DNA from: Klebsormidium nitens
Lineage: Eukaryota; Plantae; Klebsormidiophyceae
Length of the DNA stretch: 64,000 nt
NCBI GenBank assembly: GCA_000708835.1
Contig: DF237010.1
Location: 191,511-255,510 of the forward strand
Reading direction: 5' to 3'
Shown here one piece after another: positions 937 through 21,687 of this stretch. The notes under the pieces were generated by a model. It had not been told where the DNA came from and made no database searches. It saw only the letters and a program-made list of their open reading frames with translations. The stretch's first letter is position 1. Every line of letters begins with the position of its first letter. Position numbers and translations under genes: made by a program.

Positions 937-3900
937 TTACGGCTGGTTTCTTGGATTATCAATCAAAGGTTTCCGAGCCCGACGGGCAAGCCTTTCGTTG
1001 AGCATAGCTTCCAGCTCACTGCCAAACTCAGGGTCCCAACGACTTATTAAAGCTGGGTCCTCGGCAAACATCACGTAAATAGTCGTGACCCCGGCTTCGA
1101 TAACGGCAGTCACGAGGCCGATCTGCAAAAGGAAGGTGCAGCGCTTAGCAACTTTTTTACGCTGTCCTCAAGTCGAAAGCGCTCTCCCAGGAGGCTTGTG
1201 TACCCAAACACTGATCTTCGTCGACGCGGGAGGCGTAAGCGGGATGTCCGCCTCTGGCAATCCAACGGGGCAGAAGACGAGGGCACCCTCCGAATGGGAG
1301 CGGAATGGAAACCACAGCTTGAAGACCTCAAGCACGCCGATTCACTGCTGTTCTTCACCTCGATAGGCGGTTTTAGGATTGCCAAAAGAGGTTCATTACA
1401 TATTTAGCACGTCCCACCGCCGGGCTCAAGGTCGCTCAAGCATGCCTGGCCAACGCTTAGGGCTATTCTGCACCAGCAAAGAAACCTGCTGAACGAAACG
1501 CGGTGCCGCTTGTCAACGTAAAATTCTTACGAAACTCTCTTTCTCGTCTCACAATCAAGCAGACTTTGGAGCAAGACGACGTCTCCATGAAGTTTGCTTG
1601 ATGACACGGATCCGAGGCCAACGTGCGCTGCATCGCATTCTCCATCGACCAGACTCCAGCGCACTTCAAGCACGTACAGAATGCAAAGCACGTCAAGCAC
1701 GAAGCACGCATGGCAATAGCAAATTCCGATCCCTTTCGAGCCTTTCCCTCACCAGCATCATGCTGAGCAGCGCTCCCGTGACGGCCACGGGGACCGTCCG
1801 ATCCTCCTGCGTATAGTGCACCCACGTGCCCACAACCGTCCCGGTGATCAGTCCCCCGAGCGCGACGCTCAGCAGTAACACCGCCCCCGACAGGTCCTGC
1901 GCCACCAGGGCCTCGACTCCGGTCTGGTGTCAAGGGAAGGAGGAGAACCGTTAGCACTGCGACGGAACCGCGGGGTGAAGAGATCAGACCTGCGCCTGCA
2001 CTGAGCGTCAGGTTTACGTGCTGACTGCACAATAAGTCACGGAAACGTTGAGTAGTTTTCATGCAAGCAAATAAGTACACGGCGTCGGGTGTCTCTTTCA
2101 GCGACGAGACACGGCTCTTCGACTTGCCAAGGAGCAAAAACTTAGTATTATTTTATGTTTTTTGAATTGTTGAAACCCAAAACTTATTGCGGCGAAAGCG
2201 GAGGTGACGTAGCAGCGTGTTGTGATTGGTGCAAAGGATGTCAAGCAGGGATCTCCTACTCTTCAAACACGTCGAAGCCATTCCACGATTATGTGAGAGG
2301 ACGGTTTGAGCGGGTTCTCAAAGGTCGTTAGCTAGAGAATCCGCAGCCAGAGGTGTCAGGGCGTGAGAAAGCGCCGCTCGTTAAGCCGCGAAGCTCAAAG
2401 TTGGGTAGACCCAGTGACTCCGGCGCAAGACGTCCTCAAAGAGTGGAGAGAAAATTGATGATCCACCGAGGAGTGCGGGGCTCACCAGCTGGAACCGCTC
2501 CCACGCATCTGTCGATGCCCGGTTGAAACCCTTCCCACCAATCGCCATCTGCACGAAAATGAAAGGGCTGTCAAACAAGAGCAGACGGCCAGGTTCTGAA
2601 AGAATGAAAAAAGCAACTCGGATGGCACTCGCATCGCCAAAACTATGAGGACGTAGGACGGCATAAATGCTACTGACAGGACAATGTTTGTGTGCGCTAC
2701 TTTACGCGCTACTTGATAGAAGCCGGTGACTCAGTGGTGCCCAAATGTTTGAGCTTCTGAGGCGATTTCGATAGCCCCAATCCTTCTGGGAAGCTCTGCT
2801 AACCAGTCCATTCCGAGCGGAGGCAACCATCAGACTCCACGAGTAGAGCGTTTGACTGTTCAATCAAACGTGCGGAACGCCAAAACGCTGGGCACAATCC
2901 CGGACCGTTCTTGTGAATTTTCAGCAACCATACTACCGAGCTCGGCCGCGGAATCTAAGTTGTGCTGACGGACGAAAGCCATGCGCCGTTCTTGTGGTTC
3001 TCCAGCAATCGTAGTTCCGAGCGCGGCCGCGAGAAAACGAACGGGCTGACGGACAAGAATCATGCGCGCGCACTCACGTGGACGTACGCGTACTTGTTGA
3101 AGATGCGCACGAAGCCTTCCAAGAGGCCCAGGTAGCAGTCCAGGCAGCACAGCATGCACTCGTTGGAGCGCATGCGGCCGCGCAACCCCCGGGCCTGCAC
3201 GGACGGTCCGGGATTGTGAGTTGGGCGACGAAAGCAAAAGTGATTTACTTGGAAGCTGTTTTACCGGCAAAGCGGGACTCGTTGGAGCGCATCCGGCCAC
3301 GCAGCCCGCGGGCCTGTACGGACGATTCAACAACTTATCAGCCGGATAAGCTTGTGAAAGGTTCGTTCACCTCAGAACTGATTTCGCCTCTGCAAATACA
3401 GCGAATCAGGGTGAAAGCGGAGGGTGACGGTTTATCTCGTACGGTATTACACGTTATCTGTCCGGATTCGGTGGTCTCGGTGCTATGGGCGTTACATCGA
3501 AATAAATGGTGTGGGTCTGGTGAAACGTAAAGCATAAATGACGAGGTTCCGCCAAGAGATCGATGAAGGGGAATGAGCGACAAAGAACAGCGTCTAAAAG
3601 TCCACAATGAGAAACTCGGGCAACAAGCCATGCTGCATGCCAATGGATGAGCGACCCCAACACAGTTCAGCCAGATCGATTGCTGGGAGAGCCTCGAGAG
3701 CTGTTTGCATTGCTAGATCCTCCATTCTTCAATCCAGGCTCTGGTTTGATCCTGAATGCACACCCGAAGACTGCTCCTCTCTGCTAACTCCAATAAGGTA
3801 ATCTTGAAAAATGTCTCACCAGCCACCGAAGCGTCCTCACGGGCGGGCTCAAGAGCGACCCAAAACAGACGCTTCCAAATGAGCTGGTCAGCGCCACTAC

Positions 3901-6900
3901 CAGGCCCCGCGAGCTGCGGTGTTCCGGCGGCTGGCCCTCCCCCCCTGCCAGGAACCACTGCGCAAACGCGCAGGCTGCTGCCACGTGGACGACGTTGTGC
4001 GCCACGACGGCGGTCCACAGGAGACTCACCGACAGCAAAAACAGCTTGGCCCACTGCGAGGAAGGAAGTGGAAACACATTTGAACGGCCAAGTCTAGATG
4101 TAATATTGCCACCTGGTTATAGAAGAAACCAAAACGAACGATGTCCAGATGTTTGTGAAAGTGCCGTCCCGGATGCCTTTTTCAATTGCCTACGTCATTC
4201 GCACTTTGCAGGTGACGTCAAGTCCCGATGCCCAAACAAAATCTTCTGCAGGTCCTCATCGAGCGTGTCTAGCTGCTATGTTTGGGATGCGATAAGGGGT
4301 GCGACCTTCTCAAGCGGTGAACGAAAGACTTGTTACCAGTCGGATATTTTGAGCAGAACGCACGACAGAATCCTGCTCAAAGTACGCATGGTCATAGTCC
4401 ACGCCAGCCCAGCATCGACAAATACATGACCTGTAGCTGGCGAAAAGCGTGTTGTTACGAACTTCAACAGTCAAGCAGAGTTCCCTGAGCGACCTCTCAT
4501 TCCAAGGCCGAACTCGAAATGACAAACCAAAGTTAGCCGCATCAAAGGGAAGCCTGAGCAGCTGCGAAAGCATACGTGGTGAAACGTCACTTGCATCAGC
4601 ACTTGCACCACATGGGAGACGCGAACAGCGGCCCTCCAAGCTGTGCGCAACTTGCTCATTGAAGTTGAACGTTCAAGTCACGAGAAGGCGACATTGACGT
4701 ACCCGGTGTTTCTCGGACGAAAGTGCGATGGTCCCTGCGGCACCGAACGTCCAAAGCGCCAGCCACGCCAGCGAAACGACGCCGACTAGGAACGCGACGT
4801 ATAGTGTGGACGGGAAATCGCCCACCAGGTCCACCGCTTTTTGGATGACGAGAGCAGTAAAGGGCAGCCTGTCGGTACAGGAGTGCGCAATCTTGGATGT
4901 CAGTATCAGGGGGTGATTCGAACAAGAACCTCTTAAGAATCGACTCCGCTAAGCTGATTCCGGGGTCTAGTATCGAGACTCTTGCGAAACATCCTTCGTT
5001 CCCGTGCTTGAGCTCAGTAAGTGACTAACCAATTAAAGGCCAGCGAAGATCTGAAAGGTCTAACGTTCTCGGTTCGACCAGTGACATATCCGGGGCACCC
5101 ATGCTCCACATTGCTCCTGCGTAAGACCGCAATACGCCGGTTCAAGTAGTCGGCCTGAGTTGCAAAAGTGTATCGCAAAAATGGTTAGACACAGGCCAAG
5201 CCTTCTTACCACCAGCTTCCCTACTGTCCAATTTCGACAGGAGCAAACTCACACCAGGCTGGATGTTTCACAGGGAAGGAGGGCATCCAAACTATTCGGT
5301 CTTGCAACATAGCCATACCGAAAAAGTACCTCGCCCGCTTCTGTATCATCAATACCCCTCACCTGTCTGTGACCGTAAAGGAGAAGACAAAAGCGACCGC
5401 CGCCCCCGCCGCAAACCCGATTCCCCACAGGGGGCTGTGGTTCCAAAAGAGGAGTACGCTGAGAACAGCCCCAAACGTGCTGACGGAGTGGACTGACATC
5501 TTGATCATGTCAGCGGAGCACCGCCGGAAGAGCCACAGCCAGGCCCAGGTCAGCACGATGCCGAGCCCGGCCGCACCTCCGTACTGCAAAGAGCGGATGG
5601 TGGGGGTTTCAGAAGTTGATGGGTGCGTTTGGCCGCTCAAGCGTTCTAAACCTGGTAAATTGGGGTAACAGAATATGATGGAACTTAAGGGAAGGACAAA
5701 AGTGCCAAGACAATGCAGGAAGTAAGGAGAATCGTCATGGATCAATGTTTAAACCAAGAACATGACCTGTTTCCTGGCAATTTCTTCCAGAATTCAGGTG
5801 GCAATGTTGCAAGCTCACAGGGGAACCCCACAAGATGTTGCTGTGAACACTGACCCACTTCCTAGTCGGACAAACCCTGCTGCCATAGAAGTACGTGACA
5901 ATCCAATTCAGGACTGAAAACCCCTCTAGTAAGCCAGCCTTGAACGGAGAATATGGAGGCCAGAGAACATTGCGGGCTCATAGGTCAAAATGCAGCGTTG
6001 CAGGCAGCGCCCAAAGCTAATAGACCCAGTTGTCCTCACCAGCTTCCTCACTGGCTTTCAGGCAGCTTTCTTCCATTGCCTTTCATTGGGGCGCTAACGT
6101 TCTTCAGATGTTTCAAACCTCCAGTGCAATCAAAGCAAACGTTACTAAGTGTCGGCTTTCTGACAGCAGCTAAAAAGGCGTCCTACCTGCGGCCAGTAGG
6201 TGGTTGTCTGGGAATGTCGATCTGGCCCGTCGAACCTCATTTTGCCCCACACAACGAGCGCCCATCCTATCAGGCCAAGATGCCCCAGAAACAGACCCGC
6301 CCACAAAACGTCCCGGAACGGCCGCTTTGCATCCCCCCCCGCCAACGTCAACTCGGGGCGTGTCGCATTGCTCGCACGATGGGGGAGCGCCCGGGGGCTT
6401 AGAGGAACCTCCTGAAAACACAGTGGGGACCATTTTGACATGACTTTCTCCAAAGGTTTCGAAAGGAGACTGTTAGATTGGGGCCTCTTGGCTGCCTAAG
6501 CACGGAAGATGTGTGCGGGCGCTTGGGGGCTGCTCTTGAAGGGTTGTAAGCTGACAAAATTTTCTGAATCTTGCCAGAACAAGTTGAAAAGTTGTTCATT
6601 TTTTTTGACGAAATGCAACTTTAACCCTCCAGTTGAGTTTGTTGGCTTTTCCTGAATTATGGCACTCATGTCAATTGCTTCCACCCAAATGATATCTCAG
6701 TGCCAAAAGTATATCAGGGAAATTCGCATCTTTGTCGCGCAAACAAGAGCCTGCGCAAATAAGAACAGCTTTGAGAGCTAGCAACACTGCCAAGATCACT
6801 CATATCCAACATTGCTGGTTTGCATTCTTGGTTCTCCTCCTGCCACCACTGATCCACTTAACAGAATTTCGCATCTTACGGAAAGGATTGCGCACTGCTT

Positions 6901-7026
6901 GACCACCAGCGCAGGGCTCACCTCGGAATCAAAAGCAGCGGCTGGGGCTGTGCCCGCATGTCCTGTCTCGGCGTCATCAGAGAAGTTTGAATTGTAAGGA
7001 GTGGCAAAAGGCGTGGGCAGAGACAT
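937..7026 (-). CDS. Choline transporter-like (CTL/SLC44/PNS1, plasma-membrane choline transporter family) protein, about 495 aa, 9 exons
   Basis: Manually spliced GT-AG exons 7026-6922, 6411-6187, 5583-5363, 4868-4703, 4053-3820, 3194-3078, 2548-2486, 1923-1753, 1122-937 keep one frame (1488 nt). Family motifs: SFGSVCFGSLL, CCLDCYLGLLEGFVRIFNKYAYVH-MAIGGKGFNRASTDAW, TGVEALVAQDLSGAVLL, AVIEAGVTTIYVMFAEDPALISRWD, plus many TM segments. Resembles the plant At5g13760-type clade (from recall). Confidence 0.9.
3158..3330 (-). repeat. Direct duplication (about 50 bp, 119-bp offset) of a CTL 3' splice site plus exon head
   Basis: actcgttggagcgcatgcggccgcgcaacccccgggcctgcacggacg (real exon 6 start, 3194) versus actcgttggagcgcatccggccacgcagcccgcgggcctgtacggacg (intronic copy, 3313). 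Confidence 0.85.
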
Positions 7027-8247: not shown

Positions 8248-11200
8248 ATGGTCAGTCTGATCTGCCTGCTGGATAATCACGGGACGCCCTTGCTGACGAG
8301 ACATTATGATAACGGAACTGAGGCGCCATCGTTTCCAACTCTCGCCCTGCTGAGCACTGTAAGCCGAGAGCCCACATTTCTGTACATCTGCGGTTAAATG
8401 AGAATTGCAGAGGAACTTTGGTGCACTTCGGGGCTGAGCCCTTACATACGTGCGCTTCGTAAAGTGGCCATAAAGCAGCCCCGGGCGTTCTGCCATCAAG
8501 GGGTGGTGCTCTTTGAATATCACTCGGAAGCTTCTCATTGGCTTAAAGTTCACATGGGCAGCTCCCAGATGACCTGACACTTGCTTAAGAACTGATAGCT
8601 TGGGGAGATGAGCCAAGCTTTAAATGCATATCATATCTGTTTCCAGGTTGTCAAGTACAGCGAGCATGGCGGATACCAGCTCGATCAATTTGCCTCAGAT
8701 AACATGCGGGTTGTGTTCAGGAGGTACGTGCACCACTGACACGAGCTCCCTGCACAAACTGCTTCGATGATAAGGTTGAGAATGTCTAAATGGAAGCCGT
8801 AGTAAAGATCGACAACCAGCTCAGTAATGGGGCCCATTATCCAAGACACGAGTGCCCGGACCCACAGTTGTGTAAATTGCTTTCAAAGTAATGACACTCA
8901 GGTGTACATCGAAATGGACGCCACTGTTCACAAGATCTGACCCAATTGCAATGTGGCCACCACCCTTCTCCTTCTTTGTTAATCGAGATCAGACAAACCC
9001 CCCGACGGGTCTATTTCAAAGTGACATCTCAATCAGCTGGACATGGCCTGTAGAAACACCAGACTCTGGCGCAAGAAGATATTGCCTCAGTAATAATCGA
9101 CTTTCTGACTCCTGCTTTTTGTGCACAGCTTTCCAGAGGGCCTTCTCCTGGTGGCAATGACGGGAGACCTGGCAACGCCGGAAAGCGCACTGGGCAGGAT
9201 GCTACAAAGAATACACGATGCGGTATGTGCTAGACTAGTTTCCCCCAACCTGTCAATGCTGAACATCTGGTACGTTGCAGGAATGTCAATTGATTACTCA
9301 TATTATTGAACAGGAGATGGGGGGCGACAGGTGCTCTTGATTGATGCAGGGGACTTTAGGAAACAAACTTAGGGATCATTGATTGTTACTTTCGCGTGTG
9401 CGCAGATAGTGATGGTCCTGGGGGCGAGCACGCTAAGTGGAAGCACGGACGCTCTGAAGCGCCAGCTCAAGGTGCACTCTCCCACCCTGTTTGCAAGAAG
9501 GCGGCGGCGTGCTGTGCCGCTGGCCACTTTGTGGCCGATGTACCTAGAGCTTGTGTCGTGACTCAGGCACTTGCAACTTTTCCATAAAACTACACAAAAA
9601 GTTAGATTTGTCACTGAGGTTCCACTAACTCTGAAAGTTTCTTCATATGCGGTGAGCCAGATCTAAGATGAGAGCGTCAAGAAATGGTTAAGTATGATAA
9701 GGCTGCATGCCTTCGATGCTGCTGCCTGAACAATTCTCTCGTCCACCCTTCCCAGAGTGTCGTCCCCCTGGTTGACCGCTTGGCGGGCAGAGCTGGGGCG
9801 GCCGACTCCGGAGTGGACATGGTTGAGGTGCAGATTCGCCTGCTTAGTTGCTGTCTTATCTGCACCCATCGAGCTTCCATCCTCCTGCTGCTGAAGAGCC
9901 GTGCTTTCCATGGGACGATCAGACCTCAGATGTGTAGATTTGCTGCAAATACGCCTCGGGTCATGCCGTTTTCCCGGCCAGAAATGACATTTGGACGTCT
10001 GCTTTTGGGTCCCGCAGATCCTGCCCCTGTCCTCTACTGAGCGCGCCGACCTGCGAGCTGGCGCGTCCTCATTGGCCGCAGCTGCCCACGTGGACCACGT
10101 GGCAGTGACTCTGGGCGGCCGCTTCGTGGCCGGAACTCCTGACTGGTGGGCGCTAGACCCGGGGGGGGTGCTACTGATTCAGCAGCTACTAGCGACGCAG
10201 CCGCCGGCGCTGATGAGAGACGTGCCGCTATTCCTGCCTAAGACGAGCCCCGAGGTGAGTGAAGCAGTCTGGCCTGGCGATCGGTTCCAATGACTTTCTG
10301 AGTGAGGGATAGTTGTTAAAAAAGGAAGATCTGTTCAAACAGGAAAGGTTTCGCGAGTGCAGATGAAGTATATTCTTAAGCCCATGTTCCTCGGCCCTGC
10401 TAATGCCGTGAAAAAGAGGTGCCCTTTTACAAGTTTAAGCCTGCACCTCCTCAATGCAGTAGCAGATATTGCATCACAGTGGTGAGCGGGAGAGAACGCC
10501 CATCTCTAAGACCGAGTTATCGCGCCAAGTGCTGTTCTCCTCATCTGAAGCTGACGTATGTTTTTAGGTCGCGTTCCGCCTCCTTACTTGCCGACTGACG
10601 GCGGAAGCGGAAGTTCTCCTTCTAGGGGGGCCAGAGCTAGAGCTGACCAAGCTGGCCGTGGTAAGTGACGTCAGACGCTTCTTAAGCGGGAAGACACACC
10701 GTTTTAGCCGGCACTTATCCTTTCTAAAGTATTTGCGCTGACAAAGATCATTTGGACCGCCAGTGTGGAAGAAGCTACCCAACAGCCGTTCACTGATGTT
10801 CACTCTTGTCCGCTTGCAACGTCTTCGATCATTACTCCCTTCCCTCCGGCTAGCAAACATTGTTGATCCCTACACGGCCGGAACCCCCCGGACACAGGAA
10901 CGAGTTTGGCTCATACTGGCCCATGAATCAGCAGGATGAGATATTTTAGATGGTCATTGTATCAGCTCATTGGCTGCTTTCAATATGTTCGGCTTTGGGG
11001 TCAAAACACGCGCAAGGGGTAACAAAGAACCAGAAAACGCGATCTCCGATTCTACCCGCTCCGTACCCTAACCCACGCTGAATTCCCTAAGTTACCCCAC
11101 CCGTCTCAGGCGGGTGAGCTTCCTGTTCCCAAGGTTTATGACTCCTATAACTCAGAAAGAATCTGTTCTTGCAGCTCGCGAAGGCCGCCTTCCAGGCCAC

Positions 11201-12962
11201 AGCCGCTTCCTTGTACGCGTGCGCCACCCACCTGCCACGTGGCTGCACGTCGTCCGTCGCCTTCCCCGACGAGATGCTGATGTGAGTCGTCAGATAAGAC
11301 GCCCCTCTTATTGCCTTATCCTTCTAAACACATAACTCTATGCTGAAGACATAACTTCACGTTTTGTGTTCTCTAGATTGCCAAAGGTCTGCGGCTTTGC
11401 GGATTTGCCCATTCGCTTGTTTCTCGCCCAATCGGTTGGTCCTCGGTCTCCTTCCGCCTCTAGAACTGTACTCCCTGATTAAGTCAGCCTGACGAGGGGC
11501 TCTAAGTTTGTCAACCATTTCCATGTAATTCCCGACCAATCAAGCTGCGGAGACCTTCTTATCAAGCTTTCGCTTCTAGCTTTGGCGGGACACTTTTTCC
11601 GTTCTTCGCATGTGGCTTATAACTAATCAGTGTTCTTGCTTCCCGCTCCGCAGTTTCGTGTGCATCCGTTCCGACGTCCAACAAGCGTTCCGCTATTGCC
11701 CGCCTCTGCCGCCGGAACCGTCCGCAACGGACGATCAAAGCAGAGCTGCAACGAACTTGCAGAAGGTAAAAGCGTCTCAAGTCCGGCGCATTTCTTGAGT
11801 CGCTTTTGGAGGGAAGCCGGTGGGTCGAGCCACTGACCAGCAATGGCTTCTGATTGTTGAACGCACGTGTTATTTTTTATTCCAAGCCGTTTCAACAGCA
11901 GATACAAGCCCATCTGTGCCACACTAAGCCGCATAGCAACGTAAAGTGAATATGAAGCCAAGCATAAGGACCGAAGGCCTGTCGGTCGGCCCTAAACCTG
12001 ACCTTCATCGAGTCTCTGCTGCGCAGTTCATGTACCACGTAGAAGCCCTCGTCGAACAGCACGCTCGAGACCAGCCGCCGGTGGAAAGCGGAACGCGAAC
12101 TGAATTGAGCGACGTGGTGCTACGGGAGGAGGTGAGCAGCGGCGGCCGGCGCTTCCGTCACTCTATTTGTTTTCCGCTTCTTGTTCCGGTTTCGTCTTGG
12201 ACCGGAACGGGAAAAAACCAAGGCTGCGGCGTATGAATCGCACATGCTGCCTCATGCGTGTTTTCTCGAAGTTTTCTCATGTAGGCGACAGGTTGCTCTG
12301 AGAGGGAAAATTGTGTCACTTGACCGATCCAAGGCACTACGGTGGGCTGGCCTATGGAAACGTTTCTTGCGGGATCCCCCTCGATGCCACCCAATCTGCG
12401 AGGACCTGCTTCCCGGAAACTTTAAGTTTCAGCGATTTGATCATTCACATGACGAACCGTGTCTTCTTAAAGAATAATGAAGCATTCCCAGCTCAACGGA
12501 GTGTACTCAATCTGCAGGACCGATGCTACGTGGCGGTCAACAGCGGCAACCATACACTGTTTGCGGCTCTGAAGGAAGAGGTGAGAAATTTGGATCTTTG
12601 CTGTCCCTTTGCTTCAATCTTATTTTGTATGGTCAAGCAGGCACTTCATAAGCACTACGTCGTGCAGTGAGATGCCCCAACGTGCGTCAATGAGATCCAA
12701 TATGACAAGTAAGTCGACATTTGACCTTCAACACTCTGGCTCGTTTCTTCTTTCCGTCTGCGTTGGCGCCTGAACTTACTTCGACGGTGATCGCGGGTGT
12801 TTTTCCCTAGAACCGTCCATTCGGCAGTCTGCTTAGCCGTGCCGCTTCAAAAACAATATTACCGAAGTTTCCCTCTTTAAACTGCAGGTCCCCTCGTATG
12901 CTGCAACCGCGATCGCCAGAGCTGCGCTGCAAGCCGTTCAGTCTCTGGCCGGCTACACGTAG
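8248..12962 (+). CDS. FUZ: Fuzzy (tri-longin CPLANE / planar cell polarity effector) homolog, about 403 aa, 12 exons
   Basis: GT-AG exons 8248-8358, 8647-8723, 9129-9222, 9406-9471, 9756-9827, 10018-10254, 10568-10660, 11175-11281, 11654-11765, 12027-12131, 12518-12580, 12888-12962 join in frame (1212 nt). Motifs match animal Fuzzy as recalled: LICL..N.GTPLLTR (vs LLCL..SSGVPLFCR), SFPEGLLLV..LGRMLQRI.DAIVMVLG..LKRQLK (vs SFHDSITLI..LERLLQMV.GAMVLLVG..LKKDLR), GRFVAGTPDWWAL (vs GRVVAATEGWWRL), PPALMRDVPLFLPKTSPEVAFRLLT (vs PPQTARDYPVYLPHGSPTVPHRLLT). Confidence 0.85.
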
Positions 12963-13901: not shown

Positions 13902-16900
13902 CTACATAGTGGCAAGCGAGCCAGCTCTAGCTATTTTCCGGGGAGGGATGCCGTCCTCCCTAGAAGATGTCCTGCCACTCGGTGTACTTCCCCAACTCAG
14001 TCGGGTCTGCTTATCTCGCCCAAGGCGCTTGTAACCAAGTACCTGAAAAGAAAGGAAATCAACCTTCATATTCATACCCGTCGAGGCGCCGAGGACAATA
14101 AGTATCTTCAAAGGTGGCTGGTTGCATCTTTTCGAATCTGGTCCCAGCTTATTCTGCTACTAGCTACTATACCATTGCATGTGACGCCGACGTATACTGA
14201 AGTATGCACGTTGGCCACTTGCCAGTCGCGCACGCGTCTCAATTCAATGATTATCTACGTTGCGTGTCAGATTGCTCAACGGAGATCGAGGTGCGCGCAC
14301 ATGCCAGCCCCTGTTTACCCGAGTGACATCAGCATCTTGGCTTAGCAATTTGAAACGTTAGTCATACGATCTCTGGCATGCATTGTGAGTTAAAAAGACA
14401 GTACGTCTAGGTAAGTTCTGCACTTGCGGCTGGCTTTGCTTCGGCCGTCTCAAGCCCGGCCCAAAACTGCCTCGAGCTCAGCCTGGCTTACTGAGGCCAT
14501 TCCAGAAGCAAGTTCCGCTCATATTCGCGCCTATATACAGCATAGCTGGCCGCCAACAGTCAATCTTCCAACCACAGGCTGAGGCGCGTTCGTTTTTGAT
14601 AATGTCATTGAGTTTATTGGGAGTTTCACTGCCAGCGTGGCCGCACGCCGGAGCATTTGGATGCCACTACTCCTTGGCGGCCGTTGTTTAATCGCCCTCA
14701 TCTGCAAATGTTTAGCTCGAGACCATGCAGAACAGAGAGTCGAGACGGAGTCCTACCTCGGTCGCCCGCTTGTCTTGAGGCACGTCCATCAGGTGCGGCC
14801 GCGGCGTGCTCAGCCCTCCGTCGCTTTCCGCGCTGTGCGTCCCCTCCCCTTCCGCCGTCCTCCCCCCAGCCGCCTTCCGGGCCGCTTCCGGAACGTACTC
14901 GTACGCCCGGAAGTGCGCGATCGCCTCCTGGAGCTCCGGACGCTCCGTGCGCTCGTCCGAATGAGTGTCCGTAGCGCCCGGGCCGCCAGAGTTCCCACTC
15001 GACCGCGACCGGCCTGGGCCCCTCTTCGCGCTCGGTGTTCCACCCCGGGCGGCAGACTCGACCCGACCGAAGGGCGCGTTCACACTCCGCGCCCTTGGGT
15101 TCGTCTGCGCCTTCGGCCAACCCGGTGTAAAACCCGCAGTTGGCGCGCCATTCCTTTCTCGGGTAGACTGCAGCCCGGTCGAGATACCGAGAGCAGGGCT
15201 CGAAGGAAACCGCTGACGCTTCTGGCCCTGGTTGTCGAGCGGAAACGCACTCGTCTGCGGCCATTCGGGCTTCCTCTTGCGCGCGAGCCAGCTCTCCAGC
15301 CCGTCGCCAGCGCCCCTTGCTCTAGTTGCATCCCGAGGGTCTTCCCATGCGGCCACTGTGGCTGCGCCCGTCGGCGCGCCGGCGCGCGGCCGCGCCTGCT
15401 CAAACCCTCCCCCAAAACCCTCTGCCGCTGGGTCCTCGAACCGGCTGCGCTCTTCAAACGGTCCCACTTGGTCGAAGTCCGTCCGGCCGAGGAACGGAAG
15501 GCCCTCGTACAGGTCCTCCTGCAGAAAAGCTTCCGGGCCGTCCGAGTAGGGCACTCGCCTCTGCTCCCGGCGTCCGTAACCCCTCTCCTCAACGTCCGAG
15601 AACGGCACGTGCATCTGCTGCCGGTGTCCGAAACCCCTTTCCTGGACCGGCTCTTGCTCCGCGATCTCCCTCGCCGACGGCCATTCGGATTCCGGTTCTC
15701 GCGCCGCTTCGATCTCCGCAGCCGTGGGAAACTCGGGGTAAGCCGGAGCGCTGACGTCAGCTTCCATCCGGTAGTCCTCTTGGTACGTCTGAGGACCTTC
15801 TCCTGGGGCCAAGATTCCCGACTGCGGAACCCCTCCGTGCTGCGGGTATCGATCCGGCGGAACCTCCCAGTTGGACCGCCCCGGTTGATGCGCTTCTGCT
15901 GCCCTCCTTTCGTAGCCATACGAGCCCATCTCGTCACGTTCAAACTGGTGAGGAGCGCTCTCATAAGCGGACCCCGCTTCGCATTCCGCTGCTGCTCCAT
16001 AAGGGATTGCTCCTTCGCAGCGCGCCCCCCCCTCTGGATCCCGACCGCAGTGCACCGTGTACTGGAGTGTGAAAAGGCGCAGGCTGCGCACCGGGACGTC
16101 GAACCGCCGCGTCAGCGCGACCTGCTGCTCCTCCGGAAGTTGCGCGAAGTGGGGCGCATTCACACCCGACGCCAGGATGGCGTGCGCGCTTACCGGGTTC
16201 AGGCTGGGAAAGGCCGTGAGAAAAGCCTCCAGGGGCGACGCAGTTTCCGGCATGGGGGGGGGGGTTTCGGGCGGAACGGAAGCGCTCCGTTTGGGCAAGG
16301 TTCGGATGGATCCGATGAGCTTGAGAACGAAGCGGTTGGTCGTGTCGGGGCAGTCTGAGAGGAGGCACTGGAGGTTGATGTCGAGGCCGAGAGCGGCCGC
16401 GTGGAGCGGGGTCAGCTCCTGATAGGTGGCGCGGAGGAAGGCGGGCGGGCCCTCGAAGATCTGCAAAGGGTTTGATGAAATAGCGGGGCAAAGTCAGAAG
16501 ATTAGAGTCACTGCCTTGGAAGCCTGGTTCTGCGACAGCTTCAAGATCACTGCATAACGAACTTACCAAGAGATGCTGAGTAGCAGGACAATAGACGAGG
16601 AGACTGAGATACGAAGTCGCTTGTTGAGCGGGAGTCGAGGCTTCTCTTTGCCTTCGTCATGCAACCTGTATCCTTCAGAAACCAACTCTGCAAGATCTCC
16701 AAAAAGTGTCGGACAAAGAGGAGAGTTGCAGAGTAGAATTACATGCCGGGCAAGAAGACCTTGCTCGATCCTTTTGACAATCCCTCTCACCAGGACGGCC
16801 GTCTTGTAGGCGAAGCTGACCGCCTTCAGGTGACTGTCCACCGCATCCTGGAAGCAGGCCGGCAGGAGCGCCGCGAGCCTGTTCACATCGTCCAGGCACA

Positions 16901-19900
16901 GCGGATCCAGGCCCAGCCGCTCCGGTGTGAATATGGTCAGACACGTGGCGCCGTGGAGGATGAGGTCCGCGGGCAGCGCCATGTCGCGCTCGACGACCTG
17001 TGCGCGCGCGCTCTTCTCCAGCTGAACGACTGACTGGTAAAGGGCGCGTCGCATGCTGATCTCGCTGTCGAGCATGTTGGCCACGATGAGAATGCGCCGG
17101 CCGCGGTCCGGGGGTTTGTTTTGGCTCGGCTGGACGTCCCTAGTGGGGACCTCAGGGATTTGATTGCCGATGTTGGTCGGAAGTGGCTCCGGGCGGCTGG
17201 TTGCGGGGAAGGCGGAGGGCTGGGGCTTGGAAACAGGAGCTGGCGGGTTTGCCTGCGAAGAGAGAGGTGCATTCAGATTGTCGGCTCCATCTCCCGCAGA
17301 GAGCCTCGTAGAATGGCACGACAACGCAGAGTAAGATCTGGCGACATCTTGAAATCAAAGTCTTCAGTCGGGTAGATTGGGATAGTGCAAAGAAGAGGAC
17401 TTGATCACTTCTGAAGCAGGTCTTGAGGACCACGGGAGTGCAGCTGCGTCGTAATCGCAGTCGTCAAGTCCCTTACAACTGTTTTTCTCCAAGTTTGACC
17501 AACAAAGATAGAAGAGTCTGCAGAAAGTGAGGATCTTGCATGGGAGACTGCTTCTGCTTCACGTTACAAAGGAGATTCTCTATGGAACTCGCATTCATGC
17601 TTACCTGGGCCTCTCCCCGAGACGGTACAGAAGGGACTCCAACACCCTCTTTCAATACCCTCATCTCCTCCACATGGCCGCGGACCCCGATCTTGTGGCG
17701 AGGGCACGTGGCTTGAGCCAGAAGCTCTTCAACCTGGTTCAGATCCGTGTCCGAGTTGCTGAGCCTTCCGTCCGAGAACTGGACGATCAAACCGAAGTCG
17801 TTCAAGGGGAAGGAGGCTTTGAGATACCTGTAGGAAAATGTCTATAACTAGCATGGGGGAGCAGTATCCTGCAATATTTGAACGTTCTGCACTCGCTGGA
17901 GTGTTGAAATTGCTGATGCTGATGGCTCGCAGCATTCGTCAGAGGAAAATGTGGGCTTAAGTCTCTCCTCCCGAGAGCGGAGAAGATAGCTGAGTCGTCA
18001 AGACACAAGGCTAAAAATGCTCTTCCTTTGTTTGAATATCTATGTAGCCTCTCTGTGCAACTAAAGCAATGCTAGGGAAAGACGGTACTTACCCGTATGA
18101 TACGAGAAGACAATTGGAAACCGTCAGGGCCTCTTCGACTCCTTGCTTAAGCTTCTGTTGGGCTTCGGCCCCTACGGAAGTCAGAGCTTTGAGAATGCTT
18201 TCGTCTCGGTCGAGCTGGAAGGGCCGGAGTCCCGCCCCGACAAGCTCGTTGTACATGCTGATGAATGCTCGCCTGCGGAAGACGCAGACGTCATTGTCGA
18301 ATCGATTCGACTTAATTCCAAACCATCCTCCCTTCTGCGATCCAAAAAGCGCAGCTCCTTTTGGGATGGTTCCCTTCATGCTGCTACACTGATGGCCTAT
18401 AGCAATTTCCTCCCCGTTGGGCTGGTTTTATTGATATTTCGACGAGGGTTAAGCTTAAAGCAAGCCATTTCATCATTCTCTCACAACATCGAACGAAAAA
18501 CAGTACCCACCTGTCCGCAAAAATTAGTATCTTTCTTTCCTGCTCGTCCCGCCGCCCACCAGAGGTAACTGCCGCCTTCAGGAGGTCACGCAGGCAAGCG
18601 AGCTTGGGCGTGTCGATCGCCAGGCCTGCCTCGACCCGGCCGTACGCGGTCTCCAGGGCGCTCTTGCTTTTCAACACAGCCATGGACATAAAGGGCATCG
18701 TCTGCAGGCTATGCTCCAAGTAGAGGAAGGCCACCTGCACCAGCGGAGGAAAGTGTCAACAGGCTGCCACATTTGAGGAACAGGGAAGTCAATCACCGGG
18801 TCTGATAACGGAAGTATCAAAGCCGTGCAAGAGGCATAACACTCGTTGACTATCTTTCTAACGTCGAAAACTAGAGTCAGAAAGCACCACAACTTATGCG
18901 ACAGTCGAGCCAAGGGTAGCCCAGAGGCTTTACATTTCAGCTGCCGATACCACGGAAAGGAAGCTGCTCTACATCAGAACCTTCAAGTCAAGCAGAAGAT
19001 TCACCATCGGCTGTTGAAGATAGATCAAGGAGCCACGCAAGCAGAAAACCTAGAATCAGTACCTACCCGCACTCCGTAATCCAGCAGGTTCGACGCCGTC
19101 TGCCGGAGCGTCCACACAGTCGCGCACAGCCTTAAGCTCTGCTGATGGACGTCCCCCGTCTCCTTTTCCGAAGCAGCCGCTCTCTTTACCAGTGCCATCA
19201 ACTCCCGGTTCCCCGCAGCGTCTACGCCAAATCCTGGCACTTTCTCCTTTAGCCTGCTCTTCTCTCTGACCAAGATCGCGCTGTAGTCAGATCTTAGCGC
19301 CGCAAGTAGGGCTTCGTGATCCTCTGGAAGGTCTACTGTGTGAACTTCTACGGCGGGCGCGCTCGGAGCTTGAACAGCTTTTCCATTCTCAGACGCTTCT
19401 CGGCTTCCCAGGTCTTTCTCCGTGGCACCTCTGCGCTTCTTGCTCGCGGGCTCCTGTTCTGCGGCAGCAGGAGCGCGCGCGCGCACCGTTCCTTTCCTAG
19501 CTTGCATGAAGAAGGACAGGTCCTCGGTCATTGCGCCGGCAGTCTTGCTGACGAAAGCGGACCGCTGCCTGACGCTGCCCTCCGAGGCTCTCGCTGCTGC
19601 AGAGCTCTCTCTTTGGAAGACCACTTCTCCCTCAAGTGCCTCTTCCTCAACTGGTCTTTTCCCCCGGGAGCTCTCTGACGTCTCTCCTTCGTCGGGTTCA
19701 GGAGCAGCGAGAAAAGCAAGCAGGACGGAGGCCTTGTTCGCTGAAGGCTGCTGAGGCTCTGGAGGAACAGGGGCAGGCTCAAGCTCAGCTTTCATCTTCT
19801 TTTTGAACCGGAAGCAGCTTGCCTGGTTGCACGCCCCCGATTGGGAGAGGTGCCAATCGAGATAGAGACTGTCGCCACCTAGACTGCGCGGTCGAGCGTG

Positions 19901-21687
19901 CGAGGAAGAGAAGATCTGAGTGGCCGTCTCTGCTGCGGGGCCCTGGCACGGCAAGTACGGAACTGGCAGCATGTTGAAGTTGAAGGAGTCCATTCTCAGC
20001 TCGGGGTGTGCCACCAGGCGATGGAACTCGTTTTCAATGGACTCAGCCGTCGGCTCTTCCAAGGCTCCGTTTGCTTCGTCCTCTGAAACCACAGCGTTGA
20101 GCTTTGTGCAGACGAGGATCGCCTTTTTAGCAACGTTGGAAGGGAGGCCCTTAAAGAACTCGAGCGGATGGATTAGTGCTGGCTCTGCCAAGGCCTCAAG
20201 CGAAGGCTGCTTTGAACCCTGTTCCCTCGGTTGCACGCCATCGCTCCTTTCTGCAAGGACCTCTTCCCAGCAAAGAACGGGTTCCGCCAAACCCGTCTCC
20301 TCCTCTTCTAAAACCCGCTTTTCCACAAACGCAGACCACGAGCTCTTATCCGATTCGGATGCATTTGAGCAGTCGGGAGTGTCAATGCTCTGATCTGCCA
20401 GCTGGGAAGCGAAGTCTTCAAACGGTTTCGTCAGGAAACCAAGCCCTGCGTTTCGCATTCTGCTGCCTTCACCCAGAGCAACATCAGGAAGCTCCTGAGG
20501 TTCAAATTCCCAGACCGTCGCTTCTGTGCTTCGGCATCCGGAGTCGTCTGCATTGACTGAAGAGCTCTTCGTTGTTGGACACTTGGATTTCTTCTCCTCT
20601 GCTTCCAGCATGCTGATGATCAAAGGGCAAGACGCCGCTGTATCAGGATTGGAAATCTCAAGCGGCTCTTGGAGATAACCAGGGTCCAGACCTACTTTCT
20701 CCTGCAGACGAATAAATGAGTTCACTCGGAGCCACTCACCATGCATAAAGCCTCAAGCATGAGCAAATGCACGATGATCCACTCGAGGAAGGTAAAGGAA
20801 CAGGCGCATGATCCACGTTCTGAGGCTTTCTTTGAAGACTCCAGAATGTAAATGGTGCTATCATGCAGAGTCCTTGCTGCAGCTTTTGAAACACAGTTGA
20901 ACAGTATGAATCATTTCAAGCCTTACCCGTAATCTCCGTAATACAGGGACCTCTTCGTCGATCTCAACCTCTTGAGATAACTTTATAAGGCAGCATGGGC
21001 TCGAGCCTCGATGCTGTCCCTGGAAAGGAAAATGAGGGACTTTCAACAGATTTGTCTAAGCTTATGCTGTGAGATGATCTGAGATGACAAATATGGAAAA
21101 ACATTCAATATTGTTTTTTGCTCAAGACTGTGGCAGTCATCGTGGATTGAGTTTTCTAGAAAACCTACCTGCAGGTCGCTTTGGTCGAAAAACTCGCTTT
21201 CTTCGAGTTTCTGTATCGGATCAGCTTCGAAGACCTCTGGATCTGGATCCTCCAAGGTCCTGAAAGTGGACCAGAAAGAATGCTGGCTCTCCATGTTAGA
21301 GACCCTACCCTCCTGAACTGGGAAAGGCGGAAAGCCGGCGTCACACGCTGCTGTTTGTGAAGAGAGGTGCGAATCCCTCGAAGATGCAACTGGAGATGAT
21401 TTGCCCAGGATGCTTCCTCCATCCTCAATCAAGATCCTCTCAAAGCTCTCTGCAAGAGCATTCGCTGTCTCCCGTTCGTTTGCAGCTGGATGGTCTGTGA
21501 GATGCCATCCGCTGACTTGCAGCAGATCGTCGCAGGACGAGATGATTGCAGGTGTAACCTTCTTCTCAGGATCTTCTGGCCTGCATGGAGCTACTCTTGG
21601 AACCGGGAGCAGATACGATATGTGTTGTGCTCGCTCTTTCGCTGCTTGTATCGCAAAGAAATCTGTCCCATAAGAACGGAGACGCAT
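13902..21687 (-). CDS. SHOC1: SHORTAGE IN CHIASMATA 1 (SHOC1/ZIP2, XPF-like meiotic crossover protein), multi-exon
   Basis: N-terminus MRLRSYGTDFF..HISYLLPVP (21687) resembles plant SHOC1 MRTRFLNIDYF..LPAP. Large coding exons lie in ORFs 19025-20746, 18384-18740, 17473-17805, 16563-17324 and 14712-16466. XPF/HhH-like region: IFEGPPAFL..LHAAALGLDINLQCLLS..ETASPLEAFLTAFPSLNPVSAHAILASG..FDVPVRSLRLF. Probable last exon 14042-13902 (VLGYKRLGRDKQTRLSW, like the plant QTKLVW terminal motif) joins in phase to donor 14756. Small internal exons around 20750-21050 and 17850-18380 were not fully resolved. Confidence 0.85.
15541..15648 (-). repeat. 54-bp (18-aa) imperfect tandem duplication inside the SHOC1 low-complexity C-terminal exon
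   Basis: tccgagtagggcactcgcctctgctcccggcgtccgtaacccctctcc versus tccgagaacggcacgtgcatctgctgccggtgtccgaaacccctttcc. Encodes ERGFGHRQQMHVPFSD / ERGYGRREQRRVPYSD. Confidence 0.6.

What the first reader, a model, noticed from the sequence alone, without database searches (positions are those of the whole stretch)
8248..12962. Complete Fuzzy (CPLANE / Rab23-GEF subunit) gene in a streptophyte alga, mostly hidden from the ORF track
Seen: 12 short exons splice into an intact ORF of about 403 aa with Fuzzy-type motifs (GRFVAGTPDWWAL, RDVPLFLPKTSP), which fit Fuzzy better than my recollection of Mon1/SAND. Established: animal Fuzzy pairs with Inturned as a tri-longin GEF for Rab23 and acts in ciliogenesis; Rab23 is kept in flagellated plant lineages and lost in flowering plants. 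Inference: this alga may retain a CPLANE-like Fuz-Intu-Rab23 module for building zoospore or gamete flagella, a system studied almost only in animals.
Basis: partly seen in the sequence, partly recalled or inferred. Interest (0 to 1): 0.75.

Follow-up and report, generated by a model that had tools for sequence, protein, structure and literature searches.

The report
Fuzzy (FUZ) orthologue in Klebsormidium nitens
This is a real, intact 12-exon gene of the alga Klebsormidium nitens that encodes a true relative of the animal cilium-building protein Fuzzy. It is already in the public annotation as a nameless "hypothetical protein", and whether its partner proteins exist in this alga could not be checked here.

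Summary
Window 8248-12962 (+) holds 12 exons, all GT..AG and phase-consistent. They total 1212 nt, giving 403 aa plus TAG.

The chain matches, exon by exon, the public model GAQ80756.1 / KFL_000610340 ("hypothetical protein", Klebsormidium nitens NIES-2285). So the gene was hidden only from a prokaryote-style ORF track.

It is a Fuzzy orthologue, not MON1 or HPS1:
- The protein hits solved human FUZ at 8e-30, with no MON1 or HPS1 chain up to E = 10.
- A profile built only from non-opisthokont relatives scores 266 bits on FUZ against 35 bits on MON1A.
- An AlphaFold model (pLDDT 83.5) shows three longin domains. Its best match is FUZ in CPLANE, at TM 0.83-0.85.

A Klebsormidium-like metagenome contig keeps all 12 exons, with DNA similarity confined to exons and dN/dS of about 0.13.

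Relatives occur in Mesostigma, Cymbomonas, Myrmecia, Cyanophora, Diphylleia and a choanoflagellate. The family is therefore ancient and not a metazoan invention.

The inferred Fuz-Intu-Rab23 module is untested, because I had no referenced seed sequence for INTU, RAB23, WDPCP or RSG1. The scan holds a second first-stage note on this same stretch (s1-342658).

Verdict: a new member of a known kind, of moderate interest.

The parts
8248..12962 (+). Whole coding span of the FUZ orthologue (KFL_000610340 / GAQ80756.1): 12 exons, 403 aa
8248..8358 (+). Exon 1 (aa 1-37), start of longin domain 1. The ATG is the first start codon after an in-frame stop.
   Evidence: Hit by Mesostigma, Myrmecia and Cyanophora FUZ in tblastn.
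8647..8723 (+). Exon 2 (aa 38-62 plus 2 nt of codon 63)
   Evidence: Conserved in L003.
9129..9222 (+). Exon 3 (aa 63-94)
9406..9471 (+). Exon 4 (aa 95-116), helix alpha3 of longin domain 1. It carries K116 at the position of human R129.
9756..9827 (+). Exon 5 (aa 117-140), end of LD1 and the low-confidence linker
10018..10254 (+). Exon 6 (aa 141-219), core of longin domain 2 with the FUZ-family motifs (DWW...L and RDVPLFLPKTSP, which is LD2 strand beta3)
10568..10660 (+). Exon 7 (aa 220-250), LD2 strands beta4-beta5
11175..11281 (+). Exon 8 (aa 251-285 plus 2 nt of codon 286)
11654..11765 (+). Exon 9 (aa 286-323), start of longin domain 3
12027..12131 (+). Exon 10 (aa 324-358)
12518..12580 (+). 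Exon 11 (aa 359-379)
12888..12962 (+). Exon 12 (aa 380-403 plus TAG)

Best explanation
Window 8248-12962 (+) is the Klebsormidium nitens gene KFL_000610340. It has 12 exons and encodes a 403-aa protein made of three longin domains. The protein is an orthologue of animal Fuzzy (FUZ), inherited vertically within the green lineage and kept under purifying selection. All of that is shown here. By homology, and so inferred rather than shown, it most likely pairs through its first longin domain with an Inturned-like tri-longin partner to form the exchange factor that loads GTP onto Rab23. That complex would act at the basal body when flagellated cells (zoospores) are made. Its most conserved strand, LD2 beta3, may dock an RSG1-like GTPase as it does in mouse CPLANE. 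My confidence is about 0.93 for FUZ orthology and about 0.55 for the Rab23-GEF and flagellum role.
For: Exon chain: it is intact and identical to public protein P0001. Sequence: P0001 against all PDB chains gives human FUZ at 8.4e-30 over residues 2-320, and no MON1 or HPS1 chain up to E = 10. A profile of only non-opisthokont relatives (A2) gives FUZ 5.9e-78 (266 bits, full length) against MON1A 9.4e-8 (35 bits). Pfam Fuz_longin_1 and Fuz_longin_2 score above their cut-offs. Structure: the AlphaFold2 model has pLDDT 83.5 and pTM 0.83 with three alpha-beta-alpha longin units. Foldseek ranks FUZ chains of CPLANE and of Fuzzy-Inturned(-Rab23) first (E 1e-30, TM 0.83/0.85, 24% identity), ahead of MON1 (E 1e-19, TM 0.72-0.77, 15-17% identity) and the best BLOC-3 chain (TM 0.58-0.61). 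The ESM Atlas agrees. Selection: a Klebsormidium-like contig, L003, keeps all 12 exons collinear. Nucleotide similarity is restricted to exons, AG/GT sits at homologous borders for 10 exons, and dN/dS is 0.135 over 268 codons. Distribution: relatives occur in the flagellate-forming taxa Mesostigma, Cymbomonas, Myrmecia, Cyanophora, Diphylleia and Salpingoeca. The green-lineage sequences form a clade with 99/98 support. Function of the family: Fuzzy-Inturned is the Rab23 GEF (PMC6864590; PMC12383261), and FUZ LD2 beta3 pairs with RSG1 (PMC9012472). Earlier scan notes report other ciliary genes in this genome.
Against: No partner (INTU, RAB23, WDPCP, RSG1) was looked for or found in this genome, because no referenced seed sequence was available. 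No transcript or splice-junction evidence for this gene was obtained. Strain NIES-2285 is reported not to form flagellated cells under laboratory conditions. Pfam's third-longin model does not hit the protein, so LD3 rests on the predicted structure alone. The two mouse FUZ side chains that hydrogen-bond to RSG1 (Q215, Y220) align to A204 and V209 here. Human R129 aligns to K116. No tree with MON1 and HPS1 outgroups could be built.
Confidence: 0.8

Rival explanations
1. It is a FUZ orthologue whose present role in Klebsormidium is not flagellum assembly. It could act, for example, in centriole- or cell-division-linked or general endomembrane Rab activation, or in actin regulation.
For: The sequenced strain is reported not to show flagellated cells in the laboratory. 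Another basal-body gene (BLD10) is nevertheless expressed there, and its authors suggest a cell-division role. Strong purifying selection shows that some function is in use. In flies, Fuzzy acts on actin-based hairs (PMC9012472).
Against: Every named taxon with a hit forms flagellated cells. Klebsormidium flaccidum is known to make zoospores, and ciliary genes are reported to be present in the NIES-2285 genome (PMC4736243). No positive evidence for another role exists.
Confidence: 0.15
2. It is a divergent MON1/SAND paralogue, the Rab7 GEF subunit that works with CCZ1.
For: Pfam's longin models are shared by FUZ, MON1 and HPS1. MON1 chains are the second-best structural matches. One ESM Atlas cluster among the top hits is named MON1.
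Against: No MON1 chain is reached by the protein itself up to E = 10, while FUZ scores 8e-30. There is a gap of about 230 bits in the profile test. Sequence identity to MON1 chains is lower, at 15-17% against 24%. The protein starts directly at LD1, without the N-terminal extension seen in the solved MON1A chain, where the match begins near residue 158 of 555.
Confidence: 0.03
3. It is not a functional gene of the alga. It would be a contaminant, a decaying pseudogene or an over-predicted gene model.
For: The gene is annotated only as 'hypothetical protein'. Only one contig holds the exact protein. No transcript evidence was obtained.
Against: The reading frame is intact across 12 canonical introns. 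The gene sits on a 255-kb scaffold between ordinary algal genes. A related genome keeps the same 12 exons and the same downstream neighbour, with dN/dS 0.135. The protein groups with other green-lineage FUZ proteins.
Confidence: 0.02

Closest known systems
Animal Fuzzy (FUZ; human and mouse, PDB 7q3d_C, 7q3e_C, 9rs8_A, 9rs9_A), the tri-longin subunit of the Fuzzy-Inturned Rab23 GEF and the CPLANE complex
   Same: The length is similar (403 against 418 aa). Both have three longin domains with no N-terminal extension, and they align over the full length (TM 0.83-0.85, E 1e-30; phmmer 8e-30). They share the LD2 motif DWW..L...PP...RD.P.(Y/F)LP..SP.
   Different: Identity is only about 24-26%. The RSG1-contacting side chains Q215 and Y220 are A204 and V209 here, and R129 is K116. 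Pfam's LD3 model is not matched. The partners, the substrate and any ciliary role are untested in this organism.
FUZ-like proteins of other flagellate-forming protists and algae (Mesostigma viride P0011, Myrmecia bisecta P0008, Cymbomonas P0005, Cyanophora P0007, Diphylleia P0040, Salpingoeca P0015)
   Same: Identity is 26-33% over the full length, with the same architecture and invariant residues. The green-lineage members form one clade with K. nitens.
   Different: None is characterised, and all are unnamed predictions. Mesostigma carries C-terminal extra sequence.
MON1/SAND (Rab7 GEF subunit with CCZ1)
   Same: It has the same tri-longin fold and shares the Pfam longin models.
   Different: It is much more distant in sequence: 35 bits against 266 bits for FUZ in the profile test. 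In solved MON1A the match starts near residue 158, so MON1A has an N-terminal region that is absent here.
HPS1 (BLOC-3, Rab32/38 GEF subunit)
   Same: It has the tri-longin fold.
   Different: There is no sequence hit. The best BLOC-3 chain aligns at only TM 0.58-0.61.

Membership tests
Fuzzy (FUZ) orthogroup of tri-longin RabGEF subunits | Three consecutive longin domains in a protein of about 400 aa that starts directly at LD1 | tested here: met
   Pfam LD1 (47.8 bits) and LD2 (32.3 bits) are above their cut-offs. LD3 appears as the third alpha-beta-alpha unit (residues 284-399) in the AF2 model and lies within the full-length Foldseek alignment to FUZ. Pfam's Fuz_longin_3 model itself was not matched.
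Fuzzy (FUZ) orthogroup of tri-longin RabGEF subunits | Sequence closer to FUZ than to the paralogues MON1 and HPS1 | tested here: met
   The protein gives FUZ 8.4e-30 and no MON1 or HPS1 hit at E up to 10. The non-opisthokont profile gives FUZ 266 bits, MON1A 35 bits and no HPS1 hit.
Fuzzy (FUZ) orthogroup of tri-longin RabGEF subunits | Structure closer to FUZ than to MON1 or HPS1 | tested here: met
   Foldseek against PDB gives FUZ TM 0.83-0.85, MON1 0.72-0.77 and the best BLOC-3 chain 0.58-0.61.
Fuzzy (FUZ) orthogroup of tri-longin RabGEF subunits | Placement inside the FUZ clade in a tree rooted with MON1 and HPS1 | not tested
   No MON1 or HPS1 sequence was available by reference. An unrooted tree of FUZ-like proteins follows the species groups, with the green clade at 99/98 and opisthokonts at 98/97.
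Fuzzy (FUZ) orthogroup of tri-longin RabGEF subunits | Family-specific LD2 motif (DWW..L ... RD.P..LP..SP) | tested here: met
   W184, L186, P203, D208, P210, L213, P214 and P218 are invariant across 8 sequences from Klebsormidium to mammals.
Fuzzy-Inturned Rab23 GEF / CPLANE module | An Inturned-type partner (Intu_longin_1-3) in the same genome, forming a heterodimer through LD1 | not testable with these tools
   No INTU seed sequence was available by reference, and only this window of the genome can be read. Scan notes hold no entry for it.
Fuzzy-Inturned Rab23 GEF / CPLANE module | Rab23 substrate present and activated | not testable with these tools
   No seed sequence was available. The literature held here says only that RAB23 appears restricted to ciliated species (PMC4736243). 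Biochemistry is needed.
Fuzzy-Inturned Rab23 GEF / CPLANE module | RSG1 docking on FUZ LD2 beta3 and LD1 alpha3 | tested here: inconclusive
   The beta3 strand is the best-conserved element (residues 206-213). However, the side chains equivalent to Q215 and Y220 are A204 and V209. Presence of RSG1 is unknown.
MON1/SAND | Best sequence and structure match to MON1, and an N-terminal region before LD1 | tested here: not met
HPS1 | Best match to HPS1, and a long protein of about 700 aa with inserts | tested here: not met
   There is no HPS1 sequence hit, the BLOC-3 chains are the weakest tri-longin structural matches, and the protein has 403 aa.

The most novel reading that the evidence does not exclude
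FUZ, and by implication the Fuzzy-Inturned Rab23 exchange factor, is not a metazoan elaboration of the tri-longin family. It would be an ancient ciliary module already present before Archaeplastida, CRuMs and opisthokonts diverged, and retained in streptophyte algae. Its most conserved element is the LD2 beta3 strand, which in mouse docks RSG1. That would suggest the GTPase-effector link is ancestral too.
Probability: 0.5. Interest if true: 0.5.

Novelty: new member of a known kind. Interest (0 to 1): 0.35.

Why it matters
Structural and cell-biological papers on CPLANE describe Fuzzy, Inturned and Wdpcp as "broadly conserved in metazoans" (PMC9012472). They also describe the tri-longin GEF family as having expanded from one complex in yeast to three in metazoans (PMC10193976 abstract).

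A well-conserved, selected FUZ orthologue in a streptophyte alga argues otherwise. Relatives also occur in a glaucophyte, chlorophytes, Mesostigma and a CRuMs flagellate. Together these suggest the Rab23 activator is an old ciliary component. If so, its core mechanism could be studied outside animals, free of planar-polarity and Hedgehog overlays.

The practical gain is modest. The gene can be renamed from "hypothetical protein", and it offers an entry point for asking whether plants with motile sperm or zoospores use a Rab23 GEF in flagellum assembly.

Tried and rejected
- **Word-index protein searches.** All three returned only the protein itself or an input sequence: whole P0001, the 8-sequence profile and region 166-250. 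These blanks say nothing about absence. Relatives came only from the exhaustive representative search with exon 6.
- **Exon-by-exon Pfam scans.** Ten exons scanned on their own gave nothing, because 21-37 aa is too short. Exon 1 also gave nothing against PDB. Only exon 6 is informative alone.
- **Joined-model step.** I used the public protein P0001 that a database search returned, and checked each exon translation against it.
- **Tree with outgroups.** A tree with MON1 and HPS1 outgroups was not possible, because no such sequence was available by reference.
- **Partner genes.** The search for INTU, RAB23, WDPCP and RSG1 was not possible for the same reason. Scan-note look-ups for these words were blank.
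- **Literature.** No paper in the held library discusses non-metazoan FUZ or INTU. None lists Rab23 in Klebsormidium or land plants.
- **Transcript evidence.** The Logan contig with the relative's exon 6 (L002) is genomic, since its reading frame runs into the intron. It gives no junction evidence.
- **Downstream neighbour.** It has no Pfam hit on its large exons, and one exon searched against PDB gave nothing significant.
Full report
**What is there**

The + strand between 8248 and 12962 carries twelve short exons, read directly from the sequence and checked by script.
- Coordinates: 8248-8358, 8647-8723, 9129-9222, 9406-9471, 9756-9827, 10018-10254, 10568-10660, 11175-11281, 11654-11765, 12027-12131, 12518-12580, 12888-12962.
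- All eleven introns (183-514 nt) begin with GT and end with AG.
- No exon has an in-frame stop, and the two split codons read AGC and ATT.
- The total is 1212 nt, which is 403 codons plus TAG.
- The ATG at 8248 is the first start codon after an in-frame stop.

**How I searched the spliced model**

- Exon 6 alone hits Pfam Fuz_longin_2 (E 2.8e-4, just below the cut-off).
- Exon 6 alone also hits solved human and mouse Fuzzy (E 1.6e-8), with no MON1 or HPS1 chain.
- The other exons are too short to hit anything on their own.
- An exhaustive HMMER search with exon 6 returned a public 403-aa protein, P0001, that is 100% identical over the exon.
- All twelve exon translations are found in P0001, in order and contiguous.

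From then on I used P0001 as the referenced full-length protein. The step of joining exons myself was left out.

**Identity of the record**

P0001 is GAQ80756.1, "hypothetical protein KFL_000610340", UniProt A0A0U9HMS9, from Klebsormidium nitens. It is encoded on scaffold DF237010.1 of GCA_000708835.1, in a gene range of exactly 4715 bases. The gene model is thus already public and merely unnamed. Pfam PF19036 and PF19037 are precomputed for it. "Hidden from the ORF track" only reflects that it is a spliced eukaryotic gene.

**Fuzzy versus MON1 and HPS1**

Pfam cannot separate these three, because its longin models are shared. P0001 passes Fuz_longin_1 and Fuz_longin_2. The discriminating tests were these:
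- P0001 against all PDB chains gives human FUZ at 8.4e-30 over residues 2-320 and mouse FUZ at 5e-28. No MON1 or HPS1 chain appears up to E = 10, although both are in the PDB.
- A profile built only from non-opisthokont relatives (Klebsormidium, Cyanophora, Myrmecia, Mesostigma, Diphylleia and one unnamed sequence) owes nothing to animal FUZ. It gives FUZ 5.9e-78 (266 bits, full length), MON1A 9.4e-8 (35 bits) and no HPS1 hit.
- An AlphaFold2 model built from the 8-sequence alignment is confident (pLDDT 83.5, pTM 0.83). It shows three alpha-beta-alpha longin units at about 1-126, 139-267 and 284-399.
- Foldseek ranks the four FUZ chains first (E 1e-30 to 4e-28, TM 0.79-0.86, 24% identity). MON1 follows (E about 1e-19, TM 0.70-0.77, 15-18% identity), and BLOC-3 chains come last (TM about 0.6).
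- The ESM Atlas gives the same answer.
- The protein begins directly at LD1, as FUZ does. In solved MON1A the match starts near residue 158.

I could not build a tree with MON1 and HPS1 outgroups, because no such sequence was available by reference. The 230-bit gap makes the assignment secure nonetheless.

**Is it a living gene?**

A 30.5-kb JGI metagenome contig (L003, sample 3300060285) comes from a Klebsormidium-like relative.
- It holds all twelve exons in the same order (tblastn).
- Nucleotide similarity between the two genomes starts and stops within a few bases of the exon borders, and the introns do not align.
- For ten exons the homologous borders carry AG and GT, with equal or in-frame lengths. 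Exons 5 and 9 differ in their variable 3' parts, and frame-preserving donors exist for both.
- Over the eight equal-length exons (268 codons) there are no stops. dS is about 1.14, dN about 0.15, and dN/dS is 0.135.
- The downstream neighbour is syntenic.

This is clear purifying selection and independent support for the exon chain. Distant FUZ proteins (Mesostigma, Myrmecia, Cyanophora, Diphylleia, Salpingoeca, mole) hit exons 1, 3 and 6 in the raw window and nothing else in the 64 kb. I obtained no transcript evidence. The Logan contig L002 is genomic.

**Relatives and history**

Named hits of the exon-6 search are:
- Mesostigma viride
- Cymbomonas tetramitiformis
- [Myrmecia] bisecta
- Cyanophora paradoxa
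- Diphylleia rotans
- Salpingoeca macrocollata
- mammalian FUZ

They share 26-33% identity with the Klebsormidium protein and a set of invariant residues. These residues concentrate in LD1 strands beta1-beta2 (P14, L15, R18) and in the LD2 motif (W184, L186, P203, D208, P210, L213, P214, P218, R223).

In an unrooted ML tree the four green-lineage sequences form one clade (99/98). Choanoflagellate plus mammals form another (98/97). This fits vertical descent and argues against contamination.

All named taxa make flagellated cells (my knowledge). No embryophyte or zygnematophyte appeared, but a 79-aa query at E up to 0.001 cannot show absence.

**Likely mechanism (inferred)**

In animals, Fuzzy and Inturned form a hexa-longin heterodimer. 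Their first longin domains bind nucleotide-free Rab23 and remodel switch 1 around a Y-K motif (PMC6864590; PMC12383261). In mouse CPLANE, FUZ LD2 strand beta3 extends the sheet of the GTPase RSG1, and LD1 helix alpha3 contacts its switches (PMC9012472).

It is the best-conserved part of the family. The hydrogen-bonding side chains Q215 and Y220 are A204 and V209 here, and R129 is K116. Docking of an RSG1-like GTPase is therefore possible but unproven.

I consider it most likely (about 0.55) that the algal protein is the FUZ half of a Rab23 GEF used when basal bodies dock and flagella grow in zoospores.

Caveats:
- No partner was searched for.
- Strain NIES-2285 is reported not to make flagellated cells in the laboratory.
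- On the other side, K. flaccidum zoospores are documented, and ciliary genes are said to be present in this genome (PMC4736243).
- Earlier scan notes, which are unchecked leads, list CFAP54, CFAP20, B9D2 and PKD2 genes in this genome.

**Novelty**

The family and fold are known, and the gene model is public. FUZ-like predictions exist for other protists in EukProt. What appears unremarked in the literature I could search is that FUZ is present and selected in streptophyte and other algae. CPLANE papers speak of conservation "in metazoans".

I class it as a new member of a known kind, with interest about 0.35. The higher-value claim, an ancient Fuz-Intu-Rab23(-RSG1) ciliary module in the plant lineage, depends on the partner search listed under next steps.

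**Surroundings**

Using the L001 map (window coordinate = L001 coordinate minus 1753):
- A choline-transporter-like gene lies upstream on the - strand, at about 937-7026.
- A 1726-aa gene with no Pfam hit lies tail-to-tail downstream, at about 13902-21687 on the - strand.
- A V-ATPase subunit D gene starts at about 22509 on the + strand.

None of these suggests a functional cluster with FUZ.

Noticed in passing
window 13902-21687 (- strand): The downstream, tail-to-tail neighbour is a called gene of 1726 aa with no Pfam family on record. None of its large exons (14712-16466, 16563-17324, 19025-20746, 21043-21687) has a Pfam hit, and one exon gave no significant PDB sequence hit. It is conserved and syntenic in the Klebsormidium-like contig L003, with up to 83% nt identity at 16785-17117. 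From memory only, parts of it resemble an XPF-like/HhH2 meiotic protein such as SHOC1. This was not tested.
   Followed up: partly
window 60775-61520: A run of 746 N (an assembly gap) explains the apparent GC drop to 0.357 in the 60-62 kb bin. It is not a biological AT-rich island.
   Followed up: yes
window ~937-7026 (- strand) and ~22509 onward (+ strand): Ordinary neighbours according to the public gene calls: a choline-transporter-like protein (PF04515, 495 aa) upstream, and a V-ATPase subunit D (PF01813) two genes downstream.
   Followed up: no
window 14001-18000: GC content rises to 0.58-0.61 with strong skew over the 3' exons of the 1726-aa neighbour. Long overlapping ORFs appear in several frames there, typical of GC-rich, low-complexity coding sequence.
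   Followed up: no
L003 (JGI metagenome 3300060285, contig Ga0590115_0006221): This 30.5-kb environmental contig is a genomic fragment of a Klebsormidium-like alga that is syntenic with this window. The prokaryote-style gene calls on it are exon-sized ORFs. It is useful as a comparative partner for other findings in this window.
   Followed up: partly
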